A stretch of 64,000 bases of DNA from Perkinsus chesapeaki ATCC PRA-425 (taxonomy: Eukaryota > Protista > Perkinsozoa): assembly GCA_013115145.1 (NCBI GenBank), contig JAAPAO010000010.1, positions 62,001 through 126,000 on the forward strand, read 5' to 3'. A model generated the notes under the pieces. It saw nothing but the letters and a program-made list of their open reading frames with translations, was not told the DNA's origin and made no database searches. The translations under genes and the position numbers were made by a program. Numbering within the stretch: position 1 is the stretch's first letter; each line of letters begins with the position of its first letter. Positions 40,357 to 46,200 of this stretch are shown here, piece by piece.

Positions 40357-41062
40357 TATTTGAATAATAAAACTAACGATTAGTTGTAGTATAATTGCCT
40401 TCTTCAGCAGATTTCGATAAAGTTCCCTCAGCGATCACAAACGGTGTGCTTAAAAACAAGTCTGCCGAAAGTCAACCACAATATCTTAAAATTCCGAGGG
40501 GGACTTTACGGGAATTTCCCCAAAAAGCAAATCCAAATTATTGCACGAACTCCTTCACTTTAATGTCGGATTTACGCTTGCAATCACCATCAACATCGCC
40601 ATCTCAATATCACTTCACATTAATAATATCGTAGAGCTTTGCAGCGACATTCCTGATGCTAAATACGAAGTCCTCGTCCTTCTACGGCGGCGGCCGATGG
40701 CTTAGAACTACTCCAATGGAGACACTAGACTAATATGTTGCGATGTGTGAAACAAGCAGCCCTCGAATGGTAGTGGAGATTCCACACTGTGGAACTGTAA
40801 CAAACAACAAATGTAAAGTAAGAAAATATGAGACACGTCTAGTGATGAGAATTCATGAGCAGGCGGTCATGCTTCAAGATATCTTTTCCTCTTTCTTCTG
40901 CTTACGACTTGAAGAGGTATATAAAAGAGTGCCGGACAACACCAATGTGACACCTGTGAGCTTTCCAGGAGTTAGAGCTTCGTCGAACAAATACGCACAT
41001 AGGACCATCTGTACCTACGACAACTACTAGGCGAAAGAAGATCAAATATAGCAGTGACATAC

Positions 41063-41273
41063 CACAGGTGGCCGGAGACGGGGCTGGAATGGGATTTATT
41101 GCACTAAAATTTTTACGACGGATTTGAGTTCTCCAATGTTCTAGGATCTTAAAACTGTATAGCTTAACGTCTGGGGTGACTGCGAAGAAAAAATACAGCA
41201 CGTCTAAAATTTGCGCACTTTTTGCGCGCAAAATGGGGGTCGCAGGCACGAATCCCACCCAGGACATTTTTAA
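41063..41273 (+). repeat. Left terminal inverted repeat (211 bp)
   Basis: Begins CACAGGTGGCCGGAGACGGGG and is the reverse complement of 43478-43688 with 5 substitutions counted by eye. Confidence 0.95.
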
Positions 41274-41529
41274 AAACTCACAATCTCAGTAGCCAAAAGA
41301 CTCCATGGCTGACATATATGATATTATAGAGCCATATCAAGTACCCAGAAAAATCACCAGAGCAGGACCGAGAAAAAAACTCGACCTGTCGGCTGTAGCA
41401 TGAATCGTGTAATAAATAGGTGAGCACCGCCTATGTAATCCGTGCTAGCTCCAACTTGGGAGTGGTGCAACCTCCAAACAGTCTCTCTTTCCTCGCGCTC
41501 AACACCCTCGTTTCCTATTACATCCAATA

Positions 41530-43388
41530 ATGTTTCTGAAGATCCCGGAAAAAATTGTGAAGACGGCTGATCCTCACCATATTGACAACCTTTACCGTGT
41601 TTGCCGCTTCTGCCATAAGCGAGTGACGTCATCGAGGGGTAAACCTGTCGGCTCCCCAGGCAAGAAGACCTGCGACAGGGCTAGCCGTTTTTATAATATC
41701 GACTTTAAGCGCGAGATCACAACCACACTACTACCCAAGATCCTATGCAAGGGTTGCACCCGACGCCTTACCCGGTTTGATTCGCAACCTGATACATACG
41801 AAGCATGGAACAGGGACGAAAGATGCTTCGTTGATGCTCTGGCTTTCGATGCTGACGGAGTGGCTACTCGTAGTAAAGCATGTACACAAGGAACTCCTTG
41901 TAAGGTTTGTCAGATTGTCTCCAATCGTGAGTCGAACCAGTTGCAGGCAAAGCGCTCGGATGCTCGAAAGCCAGGCAGGCCACTGGAGCAGTCTCCACCA
42001 AAACCTATATGCAAGAAGTGTGGTCTAGATTGGTTCGACCACGATAGTGTGACCTGCAGGCGAGTTATGAAGAGACCTGCTCATGCTGCTTTGGCGGGAC
42101 GCCTATTCGGTGAACGAGTGGCGGCTAGAGGCTTTACTAAGCAGCTTGTGCAGGAGCACTTGCGTGACCAGTTCACTTCCGAAGCCGGTGGATTGAGCTG
42201 TTCTACAACGCCTCAGCGCTCTGGTGTGAAGCTCAACAGTCATGAGTATCTAGGTATCACTCCGGCTCGCTACGACAATTCCTCTCCTGGCTTGTACATT
42301 TCTACCGACTCTGCTAGAGACCTGCTAAGGCTAGGTCATCTCGGTCTCGGCAAGAACAGTGCCCGCCGGTTGTGCACTATTCTTGCCCGCGAGGGCATCT
42401 ACTTTCCAAATGGAGGTCTCGAGGCATGCAGAAGCGAGCAATGGGTGGTGTTTGGTCGTATATTCCGCACCGAGGACCTTATCCTCGAAACTGACCGGCA
42501 AGCGGCTTCTTGCAAGGCTTGCAATGCAAGCACCCCTGTCCTTTCTGCTTGTGGTCTAAGGGCACTCGGTGTACTGGGCAGCCTCCGAATGGCAGAACGT
42601 GGGCCCTCCATCAACATCACCTTGCGGACCGTAAGTACAGTGTGGTGAACGAGCCAAGTGTACAGTGGGATGGTTCTCCCATGGAGGTCCTTTCATTGGC
42701 ACCCTTGCATCTGCTTTTGGGTATCACTAATAAGGTGTTCAAGGAGGTGTGTGATCTTGAGTCGGACAGCTCGCTTGCTAAAAAGCAGAAAGCTGCCTTG
42801 CTCAAATATGGTATTAAGCGTTCGGCTTACTTCCAGGGTGATCTTCAAGGCAACGAATGTGCACGCCTTCTAGACGCCGTTGCTAATAATAAGGTCCCTT
42901 TCCTGCGTGGGAAACAGCTGAGGTTGAAGGTGAAATGCTTGCAAAGCTTGAAGGTTGTCAAGGACAAGTGCTTGGGTCTGGTGAGAGTCGATGGTTGGGA
43001 TCGGGCTATTCATGACTTCCGGGAAGCATGGGAAGCGAGCGACTTATCCTGGACACTGAAGGTTCACATACTGTGCGACCATGGCATTGAGTACCTACGG
43101 GATTTCGAGAGCGACAATGCTGCTGGCTTGGGGCTATCTTCCGAGCAGTCCGGCGAGTCATTGCATGCCAGGCTCCAGCGGATCTGGGATATGAGATTTC
43201 GAGTAAACCCCGAGAACCCCCTCTTCGGCTCTCGCCTGACCGACTGCATGGTCGCCTACAACTGGAGCCTGCAGTGGGATGAAGGTGGACGACTGCGACG
43301 CTCAGGCCAGCAAACGTCCAGCAGCGACTGCAACACTACAAGCTGCAGCGGAGTTTCGGGTATGGAGCATCTTTCCGAGCTGTCCTAG
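41530..43388 (+). pseudogene. Chapaev-type DDE transposase split by a frameshift near 42500-42530
   Basis: ORF1 has H-x7-CRxC...ID...P..LCxxC...CxxC and a GRP motif. ORF2 has KHPCPFC, APLHLLLG, GDLQGNEC, TLKVHILCDH and LGLSSEQSGESLH, matching my recollection of Chapaev transposase C-terminal motifs. Confidence 0.8.
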
Positions 43389-43477
43389 CTCCTGTAATTT
43401 TTTTATAACATCTCACAGTTGCTTCGTGATATGTAGTAGCCTCTGAGTTGTCAATAGACCCGGTTTTGGAGGACTTC

Positions 43478-43688
43478 TTAAAAATGTCCTGGGTGGGATT
43501 CGTGCCTGCGACCCCCACTTTGCGCGCAAAAAGTGCGCAAATTTTAGACGTGCTGTATTTTTTCTTCGCAGTCACCCCAGACGTTAAGCTATACAGTTTT
43601 AAGATCCTAGAACATTAGAGAACTCAAATTGGTTGTAAAAATTTTAGTGCAATAAATCCCATTCCAGCCCCGTCTCCGGCCACCTGTG
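43478..43688 (-). repeat. Right terminal inverted repeat (211 bp)
   Basis: Ends CCCCGTCTCCGGCCACCTGTG and is followed by ATAC. Confidence 0.95.
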
Positions 43689-43732
43689 ATACGGGACAAC
43701 TGATTGGTAGGAAAAATATACAACTTCAGTTT

Positions 43733-46200
43733 TCAATGAAAACGCCTGCAACAAAGTTTATATAGGAATGTATACAACATTGCCAGTTCGCTCGAAATGC
43801 ATCTATGCCACACCACATGGAGTAGCATTAATGAGCAGAATGAAAGGAGGCATTGCTTCGGGTTTAGGATACTTACCCCTCCTCTAAGTGCTGACACAAT
43901 GCTATAGGTAACAGTTGATGTAAATGTTACTTGTAGTACAACAGCTAAGTTGAATAGAACAGCCAGTAGAGCTGAAAGAAGGCATTGAGAGACTGACAGC
44001 AGCAGCAGTAGCAGCATTGCTAGTTACTGATTAGAAAGACTCTTATCATATATGAAATGTCAAAGGCGAGGTTTACAAGGGACGATTCGGCGTCAATGTA
44101 GATGAACGGCAGGCCCAAGAGTGTATACCTGATAACACAGAAATCAGTTGAAAGCCACTTCACACTGTACAGGTCATCAGTGTAGTAGGGTTTACAAAAT
44201 GATAGGACTGAAGAGTGATGTTAAGGTAGCTTTCGGGTTCCTTAAGTGGCTCAAACAACGTACCGAATCCCTCACCGAAGGGTCACAACTGCTAACAACG
44301 GCGAGCCGGCCTCAAAAAAGCCACCAACACTCCGTCGAAGCTGCTTTACTTACTGCCAACATCAACATTCTATGTACTCATATGCTACTGAAAGTATAAT
44401 GTGCGATAGTGTAATAACAACCACCACCAGCATCTTGTCTATATAACTAATCTCGATCTATAACGTATCTCTACGATACAGTAGCGCGGTGGAAGAAGTA
44501 CACAATGGCTCTACGATGCATTTCACAGTGCAGTAGATCATCATCCCGCAACTGAAGTGCGCGCCAACGATAACCTCGCCAAATTTCAGGCTAGCAGCTG
44601 TTGCAGCCACCGTTTAACTCACGCAGCATTAGTAATAAACACTGTATCAAGAGGACTCAGGGGCTTTATATTGTCTTTTCCATCATTTCCTTTATTGACA
44701 TCGGCTAACTTAATAACCAATGTGTGCACGGCAGTGACTAGCGAGGCCAGAAAACCCTGAAAATTGAGATAGGCCGATCTTGCAGCATAGATAGTGCCCG
44801 CCGCGGATGGAGCCCAGATGGACGTATGACTCATATAGGGGCAAAGAAAGTCGAAAAAAAGTAGTAAGAGGTTATATTTACATATCGCAACTCAAGCAAC
44901 AATGGCTACTTCCGCGCGAAGATGACAACATAAAAGCCTTCCTGAAACTCCACGGGGAAGATGCATTCAGGGAGAGCTGATAATGCTGTATGAAAGGTGA
45001 TGGCTCCCCGGAGGCTTACAAATAGCGCACCAGTCGCGGACACGCTGATCTTGTCGAACACAACAGTAGACATGAAGCCGGCTGTGACAAGTAGGCATCC
45101 TAGAATCTGATAAAGGATGCGACACGGGCTGTTGGCCACGACATGACCGACTGGCAATCCTGCAGTTGTCTGGGAATGTTTTGGTAGAAAGAGCCAGGAC
45201 AGGACCACCGACATAGGAGTGTTCAGCGCACGCGCCACAACCTGACAGAAGTGCCAGCCGAGAGACAGGCGCTGCGCCTACTTGGAAGCTACTAGCATCA
45301 ACCCGCATCAAGCATAACGAAGCGAAGACCAAGCTCATAGAGTTAACAATACAGAGGTCAAACGACTGATAGAGCAGCTGCTAAAGGCAGCCTCGAAGGG
45401 GATAGTATGGTACTTTAAACAGAGCCTTAACGAACACACTCGGCGATTGGGATACTGTGAGTCCCATTGGAATAGCTTTATCTGAGGAGGATACATTAAC
45501 TGCTGTAACTGTGGTTAGAGCGTACTAGCTGTCAACAGGCAAATAACTGCCAATACTGATTGGAGCCATAAGGACAGGAATGGTACGGCCTGAAAGCTGC
45601 GAGCTGATACACCAAAGATGCCTTCTGCTGCTGGAGCAGTAAATGTAGAGCATGCGAGGAAATACCGTGAACGCATTACCAGAATTGACGTTATAACAGT
45701 GCGTGTTCAACCAGGGAACGCATTAAATCACTGTTATTCATTGTGCGCCGCTCGTTCCCTTGTACATGCGTGCACAGCTAAATCCCCCTGCGAATGTAAG
45801 CTGAATAAGAAGAAGCCTTTGTAGACTCCCTTCTCGCCTTGTGTTCGTCTATATGAACGAGGAACAAGCAACAGCCACTAAATGTCCCCCCTGGAATCTA
45901 TCTTCGGGTTCAAGGAACGTATTATCCATAATATCCACACCGCTACTAGGTGGATCTAAGTGGATCAGGACCAGACTTACATATAGGTCAAGGGTAAGCT
46001 TATTAGCAACAACCATAAGGATGGCACAGGAGGCATAAAAGGAACTAACTCCGACCACTTTAACTTCTTCACCAAGTATACCAGCATTAGATGAACAAGC
46101 TAAACAACTTATAACCATTCTGATCAAAGGGCATTTACTTACCGACTCCCGAAGGCTTTCGGAGCTCTTCTAATGTATTATCCGGATGTGATACTGTCAT
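43733..46200 (-). CDS. Nucleotide-sugar transporter, GDP-fucose transporter (SLC35C1)-like, multi-exon
   Basis: VKVVGVSSFYASCAILMVVANKLTL, ARALNTPMSVVLSWLFL, LGCLLVTAGF, GFLASLVTAVHTLVIK and LQVTFTSTVTYSIVSALRG parallel SLC35C1 motifs (VxxNKxxL, ARSLTT, LQIKxTSPLTH). Confidence 0.6.

What the first reader, a model, noticed from the sequence alone, without database searches (positions are those of the whole stretch)
41059..43692. Recently inserted Chapaev-type DNA transposon in a probable alveolate parasite: horizontal-transfer candidate
Seen: intact 211-bp TIRs (206/211), CAC...GTG ends, an intact 4-bp TSD (ATAC) and transposase motifs. Known: CAC/GTG termini, 4-bp TSDs and an N-terminal zinc-finger-like domain define Chapaev within the CMC superfamily, which I know mainly from animals, including marine invertebrates. 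Inference: the insertion is young, and if the host is a mollusc parasite the family may have come from an animal host. I cannot tell whether this family is already catalogued for this genus.
Basis: partly seen in the sequence, partly recalled or inferred. Interest (0 to 1): 0.75.

Follow-up and report, generated by a model that had tools for sequence, protein, structure and literature searches.

The report
Broken Chapaev-like transposon in Perkinsus
This is a real cut-and-paste DNA transposon in the clam parasite Perkinsus chesapeaki, but the copy has lost the middle of its enzyme gene and belongs to an old Perkinsus-wide family, so nothing suggests it recently jumped in from an animal host.

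Summary
Window 41063-43688 is a 2626-bp element with 206/211-identical terminal inverted repeats, CAC...GTG ends and a 4-bp ATAC duplication.

The genome is Perkinsus chesapeaki. A named P. chesapeaki protein matches another contig of this assembly at 100%.

The element is not intact. Compared with full-length relatives (747-751 aa, single ORF), it lacks about 115-129 codons that hold the first two catalytic aspartates. It also carries 14 extra bases that shift the frame. The two ORFs are therefore pieces of a broken gene, not exons.

The family fits Chapaev (CMC group):
- C(2)C, LH and H(4)H motifs;
- a RAG1/Transib-like predicted fold;
- a ZAD/RAG1-NZD-like N-terminal zinc pattern;
- recurrent near-threshold Pfam DUF1280 (Chapaev) matches in distant relatives.

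Horizontal transfer from an animal is not supported. All close relatives come from P. marinus, P. olseni, P. chesapeaki or one unnamed ENA organism. Together they form a fully supported clade, on a long branch away from about 1500 distant relatives (19-27% identity). Several sublineages are shared between Perkinsus species, and copies in this genome range from 70 to 100% identity.

The scan had already met this family on other contigs of this genome (s1-235017). The result is an ordinary, defective new member of a known kind. I could not check whether it is catalogued in Repbase or Dfam.

The parts
41059..41062 (.). Left copy of the 4-bp target-site duplication (ATAC)
   Evidence: Read directly from the sequence.
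41063..41279 (+). Left terminal inverted repeat, starting CACAGGTGGCC
   Evidence: Homology to 12 other genomic copies starts exactly at 41063.
41530..42516 (+). First piece of the transposase gene (frame 1, 329 codons): N-terminal zinc domain, a second zinc module, and a linker with the invariant LRLGHLGLGK
   Evidence: 58-69% identical to P. olseni and P. chesapeaki proteins. tblastn with P0197 residues 1-315 covers 41536-42465.
41575..41910 (+). ZAD / RAG1-NZD-like (Chapa-like) zinc pattern: H15/H16, C25xxC28, C73xxC76, C118, C124xxC127
   Evidence: These positions are conserved across 40 near and distant relatives. Weak Pfam zf-AD match, E 0.13 here and E 0.00068-0.001 in relatives. The ligand order is the same as for RAG1 NZD in bioRxiv 10.64898/2026.01.24.700457.
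42010..42057 (+). Second zinc module: CxxC...H.D...C
   Evidence: C163, C166, H176 and C178 (P0029 numbering) are nearly invariant in A7.
42496..42516 (+). Deletion junction (RQAASCK). The 115-129 codons that relatives carry between ...ET(D/E)RQ and ...GIQ(A/S)ASCK are absent here
   Evidence: P0011 residues 256-370, P0001 residues 94-198 and P0197 residues 316-444 have no counterpart. Alignments A2, A4 and A5 show the gap.
42517..42530 (+). 14 extra bases that partly repeat the preceding bases and shift the frame from 1 to 0
   Evidence: Frame 1 reads ...QAASCK up to 42516 and frame 0 reads HPCPFC... from 42531. Relatives read ...ASCK(Y/H)PCPFC without a break.
42531..43388 (+). Second piece of the transposase gene (frame 0): C(2)C, LH, H(4)H, the catalytic-E region and the C-terminal tail
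   Evidence: 44-55% identical to Perkinsus proteins. P0197 residues 445-718 align to 42510-43337.
43472..43688 (-). Right terminal inverted repeat, ending ...CCTGTG
43689..43692 (.). Right copy of the 4-bp target-site duplication (ATAC)

Best explanation
Window 41063-43688 is a non-autonomous, internally deleted copy of a Chapaev-like (CMC group, RAG1/Transib-fold) cut-and-paste DNA transposon. The family is resident and diversified in the genus Perkinsus; this genome is P. chesapeaki. Shown: the element has 217-bp TIRs with CAC...GTG ends and a 4-bp TSD. Its single transposase gene is split by a deletion of about 345-390 bp that removes the first two catalytic aspartates, and by a 14-bp insertion at the junction that shifts the frame. 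Full-length relatives are single ORFs of 747-751 aa carrying D...D...C(2)C...LH...H(4)H...E. Inferred: the intact enzyme binds the TIRs with its N-terminal zinc domain and cuts at the CAC ends with a DDE RNase-H-like site buttressed by a Cys2/His2 zinc site, as in RAG1 and Transib. It then reinserts with a 4-bp stagger. This copy can move only if a transposase is supplied in trans. A deletion with a small partly repeated insert at the junction is the kind of scar left by interrupted gap repair after excision, as in Ds derivatives of Ac. The family was inherited and diversified within Perkinsus rather than recently acquired from an animal.
For: Anatomy.
Host: P0011 (P. chesapeaki FOL47_003077) matches G000:C1008 at 100%.
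Deletion and frameshift. The closest relative, P0017 (P. olseni, 69%), carries the missing segment.
Full-length single-ORF relatives: P0196 and P0197.
Conserved D365, D435, C454xxC457, L510-H511, H631x4H636 and E657/E661 in 95 relatives. These motifs are named as Chapaev hallmarks in PMC4079192 and as shared by EnSpm, Mirage, Chapaev, Transib and RAG1 in PMC12730594.
Fold: the AlphaFold2 model of P0197 has pLDDT 83.6. It matches the RAG1 core at Foldseek E 2.6e-11, then BbRAGL and HzTransib.
Pfam: DUF1280 is the only recurrent transposase family in distant relatives, 8/40 and 5/52 with best E 6.4e-7. DUF1280 is equated with Chapaev in PMC3985635.
Clade: all close hits are Perkinsus or one unnamed ENA source. 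The exhaustive profile search finds about 1500 distant relatives. The tree gives the Perkinsus+ENA clade 100% SH-aLRT support on a branch of about 1.3 changes per site.
Shared sublineages: P. marinus-P. olseni 90%, P. chesapeaki-P. olseni 72%, P. marinus-P. chesapeaki 68%.
Copies in this genome range from 70 to 100% identity.
Against: No Perkinsus protein matches Pfam DUF1280 directly, and the matches in distant relatives are near or below the curated cut-off, so the link to named Chapaev transposases is indirect. Repbase and Dfam could not be consulted. The 4-bp TSD rests on one copy, because every other copy found is a solo TIR or a fragment. The organism behind the ENA proteins is unknown; its clade is nested among Perkinsus paralogs, so transfer between that organism and Perkinsus is not excluded. 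The N-terminal domain model of the window protein is poor (pLDDT 56), and its ZAD matches are not significant, E 1.4 or more. No autonomous copy of this exact family was found in the assembly, so trans-mobilisation is an inference.
Confidence: 0.8

Rival explanations
1. The family recently entered Perkinsus by horizontal transfer from an animal, for example its mollusc host.
For: Chapaev elements are described mainly from animals and have a documented record of horizontal transfer among animals (PMC4079192). The ESM Atlas clusters nearest to a full-length relative are mostly cnidarian and poriferan. The ENA source organism is unidentified and has Mb-scale contigs.
Against: Nothing outside the Perkinsus+ENA clade exceeds 27% identity, in a search that read 1.84 billion representative proteins. 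The nearest named outsider is a protist, Pompholyxophrys punicea. The clade has many deep paralogous lineages shared by three Perkinsus species. Copies in this genome span 70-100% identity. No relative was found in viral contigs or JGI metagenomes.
Confidence: 0.05
2. The element is an intact autonomous copy, and its two ORFs are exons joined by a short intron.
For: Many GT...AG pairs of the right phase exist between 42416 and 42686, for example GTAAGT at 42631. Both ORFs are free of stops.
Against: No splice can supply the 115-129 conserved codons (FQLDGG... through ...ACDLKV...GIQ) that every full-length relative has, and the 2626-bp element has no room for them. Full-length relatives are single uninterrupted ORFs. 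The frame change sits exactly inside the conserved ASCK-HPCPFC string and is explained by 14 extra bases.
Confidence: 0.04
3. The family belongs to Transib, the direct kin of RAG1, rather than to Chapaev.
For: The best structural matches are RAG1, BbRAGL and HzTransib. The CACAGG termini resemble the RSS/Transib heptamer. Atlas rows with RAG1_RNase_H score 0.86-0.89.
Against: The TSD is 4 bp, not the 5 bp of Transib (my knowledge of the family). No RAG1 Pfam family appears among the 25 most frequent families for 40 relatives at E <= 1, or among the only 4 families found for 52 relatives at E <= 0.01, whereas DUF1280 (Chapaev) recurs. The N-terminal NZD/ZAD-like domain is reported for Chapaev and not detected in Transib. 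No CMC transposase structure came up in the PDB search, so RAG1 and Transib are the expected nearest solved folds for a Chapaev enzyme; PMC3985635 places RAG1 and DUF1280 in one clade.
Confidence: 0.1
4. The element is contamination or a misassembly and does not belong at this locus.
For: No empty site or second haplotype was found to confirm the junctions.
Against: The element lies inside a contig of at least 126 kb, with unique flanks on both sides. The same TIR occurs on more than 15 other contigs of this genome. Related proteins are annotated in three Perkinsus species.
Confidence: 0.02

Closest known systems
Chapaev DNA transposons (CMC: Chapaev-Mirage-CACTA; Pfam DUF1280/PF06918)
   Same: CAC...GTG termini and a 3-4 bp TSD (4 bp here). 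The motif order D...D...C(2)C...LH...H(4)H...E. An N-terminal zinc domain with the ligand order of the Chapa / RAG1-NZD module. Distant relatives give DUF1280 matches.
   Different: The host is an alveolate protist rather than an animal. The Perkinsus clade is 19-27% identical to all other relatives and does not itself reach DUF1280. The TIRs are long, about 217 bp. This copy has lost the DD part of the catalytic core.
RAG1 / RAG1-like / Transib transposases
   Same: The predicted fold of the full-length relative matches the RAG1 core over about 570-670 aligned columns (E 2.6e-11). The second D to C(2)C spacing is 19 residues and H(4)H to E is 21; from memory these are close to mouse RAG1 (D708 to C727, H942 to E962). 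The termini are heptamer-like (CACAG).
   Different: The TSD is 4 bp rather than 5. There are no Pfam RAG1 family matches, no RAG2-like partner gene in the element, and only about 10-14% sequence identity in the structural alignments.
Internally deleted non-autonomous derivatives of DNA transposons (for example Ds from Ac, or KP from the P element)
   Same: Both ends are intact, an internal segment of the transposase gene is missing, and a small partly repeated insert sits at the junction.
   Different: No matching autonomous parent was found in this assembly, so the origin of the deletion is inferred from protein-level comparison only.

Membership tests
Chapaev (CMC) | Termini 5'-CAC...GTG-3' (PMC4079192) | tested here: met
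   The ends read CACAGG...CCTGTG. The terminus is fixed by 12 other copies whose homology starts at CAC.
Chapaev (CMC) | 3-4 bp target-site duplication | tested here: met
   ATAC lies on both sides. This is a single instance; the other copies are solo TIRs or fragments.
Chapaev (CMC) | [quoted passage not shown] | tested here: met
   CPFC, PLH and HILCDH are followed by SSEQSGE. They are invariant or nearly so in 95 relatives.
Chapaev (CMC) | Complete DDE catalytic triad | tested here: not met
   Not met in this copy: the segment with D365 and D435 (P0197 numbering) is deleted. It is met in full-length family members. This makes the copy defective without taking it out of the family.
Chapaev (CMC) | N-terminal Chapa (RAG1-NZD-like) two-zinc domain | tested here: inconclusive
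   The ligand pattern H, CxxC, CxxC, C, CxxC is conserved. Pfam zf-AD matches are weak: E 0.13 here and 0.00068-0.001 in relatives. The domain model has pLDDT 56 and only non-significant ZAD hits. In the P0197 model the domain is confident (pLDDT 77-95), but it could not be searched on its own.
Chapaev (CMC) | Sequence homology to named Chapaev transposases (Pfam DUF1280, Repbase) | tested here: inconclusive
   There is no direct DUF1280 match in the window, in Perkinsus proteins or in the genome. Of 92 distant relatives found at E 1e-26 to 1e-55, 13 match DUF1280, with best E 6.4e-7 and one at 23.7 bits against a cut-off of 25. Repbase was not available.
Transib | 5-bp TSD | tested here: not met
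   The TSD is 4 bp; the fifth bases differ, C on the left and G on the right.
Transib | Sequence match to RAG1/Transib core families (Pfam PF26100 and others) | tested here: not met
   No RAG1 family appears among the families listed for the 92 relatives or for the Perkinsus proteins.
Transib / RAG1 fold | RNase-H-like core with a Cys2/His2 zinc site, structurally like RAG1 | tested here: met
   Foldseek against the PDB gives RAG1 at E 2.6e-11, BbRAGL at 9e-9 and HzTransib at 9e-9. The model is of the relative P0197, not of the window copy.

The most novel reading that the evidence does not exclude
The unnamed ENA organism carries many near-identical intact 747-751-aa copies on contigs of up to 2 Mb, and its clade is nested among Perkinsus paralogs. 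If it is not a perkinsid but a host animal such as a bivalve, that would mean transfer of this transposon family between parasite and host. A milder reading: the Perkinsus and Pompholyxophrys members show that the Chapaev transposase with its RAG1-NZD-like zinc domain predates animals, giving a protist outgroup for the origin of the RAG1 N-terminus.
Probability: 0.1. Interest if true: 0.65.

Novelty: new member of a known kind. Interest (0 to 1): 0.3.

Why it matters
As posed, as a host-to-parasite transfer candidate, the finding does not hold. What remains is modest. A Perkinsus-wide, deeply diversified clade of RAG1-fold, Chapaev-like transposons extends a group described mainly from animals to an alveolate. 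It also supplies protist sequences carrying the NZD/Chapa-like zinc domain, which recent work treats as specific to RAG1 and Chapaev. That could help root the history of the RAG1 N-terminus. For annotating the Perkinsus genome, the element should be masked as a defective DNA transposon and not called as two genes.

Tried and rejected
- **Intron model.** I listed GT...AG pairs of the right phase and printed short junction peptides. I rejected the model once relatives showed a 115-129-codon gap.
- **Pfam on the window ORFs and on Perkinsus proteins.** No transposase family matched.
- **Pfam DUF1280 against the whole genome.** Nothing matched, and the control genomes were silent too, so this is uninformative.
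- **PDB by sequence profile.** Nothing matched.
- **Empty site or second haplotype.** The flanks are unique.
- **TIR pairs around other transposase-bearing loci.** None lay within the DNA held.
- **The listing of cluster members.** It gave no names for ENA or Logan proteins, apart from the EukProt name of P0043 and the NCBI name of P0033.
- **Third word search, with a mixed alignment.** It returned only Perkinsus-type proteins, because only the 8000 candidates sharing most words were scored.
- **The search for related loci.** JGI metagenomes with P0131 and P0197, and viral contigs with P0001, gave nothing.
- **Nucleotide-sugar transporter.** Pfam on the flanking minus-strand ORFs did not confirm the transporter proposed by another reader.
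Full report
**1. The observation**

- The repeat finder reports inverted arms at 41060-41279 and 43472-43691.
- A direct comparison of the two ends gives 206/211 identical bases, or 210/217 if extended.
- The element proper is 41063-43688 (2626 bp). It begins CACAGGTGG and ends CCACCTGTG.
- The tetranucleotide ATAC sits directly outside both ends, and the next bases outward differ.
- The 25-base terminus occurs only at these two places in the window, against none expected by chance.
- At 12 other places in the same genome the similarity starts exactly at CAC, which fixes the terminus.

**2. The host**

The window is G000:C2:62001-126000, in an assembly of 41.7 Mb and 3544 contigs. The protein P0011, named by NCBI as Perkinsus chesapeaki FOL47_003077, matches contig C1008 of this assembly at 100% over all 467 residues. 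The genome is therefore P. chesapeaki, a clam parasite.

**3. The gene is broken, not spliced**

Two ORFs in different frames overlap: 41530-42648 and 42510-43388. Relatives show why.
- In alignments with Perkinsus and ENA proteins, every sequence that spans the region carries a conserved block between ...ET(D/E)RQ and ...GIQ(A/S)ASCK. The block runs from ...STPFGLC... through FQLDGGQQFLK to ...ACDLKVAA...VGIQ. The window lacks it.
- In numbers, these residues have no counterpart in the element: P0011 256-370, P0001 94-198 and P0197 316-444.
- The closest relative, P0017 from P. olseni at 69% identity, has the block.
- At the junction, frame 1 reads ...RQAASCK up to 42516, and frame 0 resumes with HPCPFC at 42531. 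The 14 bases between them (42517-42530) partly repeat the bases before them and cause the frameshift.
- Full-length relatives are single ORFs of 747 and 751 aa (P0196 and P0197). The family gene therefore has no intron here.

I did enumerate possible GT...AG introns early on. None can supply the missing block.

**4. What the enzyme is**

Pfam finds no transposase family in the window ORFs or in Perkinsus proteins. An exhaustive profile search with the Perkinsus core alignment (A4) found 1539 proteins at E <= 0.001 and 616 at E <= 1e-10. Past the Perkinsus-type hits come proteins of about 650-710 aa.

Alignments of 40 and 95 of these with the Perkinsus-type proteins show the following conserved positions, in P0197 numbering:
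- D365 (GxDGG);
- D435 (DxK);
- C454xxC457;
- L510-H511;
- H631x4H636;
- E657/E661.

Two papers bear on this layout.
- PMC4079192 names C(2)C, LH and H(4)H as characteristic of Chapaev, together with CAC/GTG termini and a 3-4 bp TSD.

The window keeps C(2)C, LH, H(4)H and the E region. It has lost both aspartates.

**5. Fold**

An AlphaFold2 model of P0197 built on the 95-sequence alignment has mean pLDDT 83.6, with the core above 90. Foldseek against the PDB gives:
- the RAG1 core first (4wwx_B, E 2.6e-11, about 570-670 aligned columns);
- then amphioxus RAG-like (6b40);
- then Helicoverpa Transib (6pqx);
- with the P element far behind.

This agrees with PMC3985635, which puts RAG1 and DUF1280 in one clade of RNase-H-like enzymes and equates DUF1280 with Chapaev transposases.

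Among 92 distant relatives, DUF1280 is the only transposase family that recurs. It matches 8 of 40 and 5 of 52, with best E 6.4e-7; one match scores 23.7 bits against a cut-off of 25. No RAG1 family appears. The link to named Chapaev elements is therefore indirect but consistent. The 4-bp TSD argues against Transib.

**6. The N-terminus**

The first ORF piece is intact. It carries H15/H16, C25xxC28, C73xxC76, C118 and C124xxC127, then C161xxC164, H171 and C177. The corresponding positions are nearly invariant across near and distant relatives.

The order matches the ligands described for the RAG1 N-terminal zinc domain: one N-terminal His, two CxxC pairs forming ZFa, then three C-terminal ligands. 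It also matches the 'Chapa' domain of Chapaev transposases in bioRxiv 10.64898/2026.01.24.700457. That preprint notes a local likeness of ZFa to ZAD.

Supporting evidence here is weak:
- Pfam zf-AD matches at E 0.13 in the window and at E 0.00068-0.001 in relatives.
- The domain model of the window protein is poor (pLDDT 56). Its top Foldseek hits are ZAD domains at non-significant E values of 1.4 or more.

I rate this feature likely but not shown.

**7. History**

Both word-based searches with the two pieces found only proteins of P. marinus, P. olseni and P. chesapeaki, plus unnamed ENA proteins, at 39-69% identity.

Pairwise comparison shows sublineages shared between species:
- P. marinus and P. 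olseni, 90%;
- P. chesapeaki and P. olseni, 72%;
- P. marinus and P. chesapeaki, 68%.

A maximum-likelihood tree (quick search, SH-aLRT support) puts all Perkinsus and ENA sequences in one clade with 100% support. About 1.3 changes per site separate it from 20 distant relatives. The ENA sequences form one fully supported clade nested among Perkinsus paralogs. The window copy sits next to another P. chesapeaki fragment.

The nearest named outsider is a protist transcript from Pompholyxophrys punicea. The nearest Atlas clusters are cnidarian and poriferan.

Within this genome there is one near-complete copy, which is this one. Deletion derivatives, solo TIRs and fragments at 70-100% identity lie on more than 15 contigs. 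At least six more divergent transposase remnants are also present, several with stops.

**8. Age of this insertion**

Four points suggest the insertion is not ancient.
- The TSD is intact.
- Both ORF pieces (329 and 285 codons) are free of stops.
- A derivative on C151 is 97-99% identical.
- Two contigs end inside 100%-identical termini.

TIR identity is not a clock for DNA transposons, and no empty site exists in the assembly. 'Young' is therefore plausible but not measured.

**9. Mechanism**

Shown: the ends, the TSD, the motif layout and the fold of a relative.

Inferred by analogy with RAG1 and Transib:
- The N-terminal zinc domain and the linker bind the TIRs.
- The DDE site, held by the Cys2/His2 zinc site, nicks at the CAC end and releases the element.
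- Integration is staggered by 4 bp.

This copy lacks two of the three catalytic residues and can only be moved in trans. No intact partner of the same family was found in this fragmented assembly.

**10. Limits**
- Repbase and Dfam are not available here.
- The ENA organism stays unidentified.
- The scan had already met this family on other contigs of this genome. A follow-up there (s1-235017) reached the same classification.

Noticed in passing
Proteins P0196, P0197, P0198, P0028, P0029 and their clusters (not in the window): An unnamed ENA source holds many near-identical copies (clusters of 10-29 members at 90% identity or more) of intact 682-751-aa transposases of this clade, on contigs of up to 2 Mb. 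This looks like a currently active family in an unidentified organism. Its clade is nested among Perkinsus paralogs.
   Followed up: partly
G000 contigs C151, C3122, C941, C2906, C981, C3004, C2823, C3407, C2810, C1080, C1165, C2847 (loci L043-L055): Nearly all other copies of this TIR are solitary, with no partner TIR within the 6-10 kb of DNA held for each locus. It is unclear why single ends outnumber complete elements. C151 has a TIR joined directly to an internal 102-bp piece.
   Followed up: partly
G000:C3421:9792-9864 and G000:C680:2336-2406: Two contigs end inside termini that are 100% identical to this element. Further copies, perhaps the autonomous one, may be collapsed or unassembled.
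   Followed up: no
Protein P0200 (P. chesapeaki FOL47_011307, partial): An annotated protein joins phosphoribosyl-pyrophosphate synthetase domains (PF14572, PF00156) to the transposase core of this family. This is either a chimeric gene model or a real fusion.
   Followed up: no
window 43733-46127, minus strand: Hydrophobic ORFs lie to the right of the element. Pfam gave no supporting match for these ORFs, so the intron placement is unconfirmed.
   Followed up: partly
Protein P0043 (EukProt, Pompholyxophrys punicea): The closest relative outside the Perkinsus clade (E 2e-55) is a complete 679-aa transcript from a rotosphaerid protist. Chapaev-like transposases are therefore not confined to animals and Perkinsus.
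   Followed up: no
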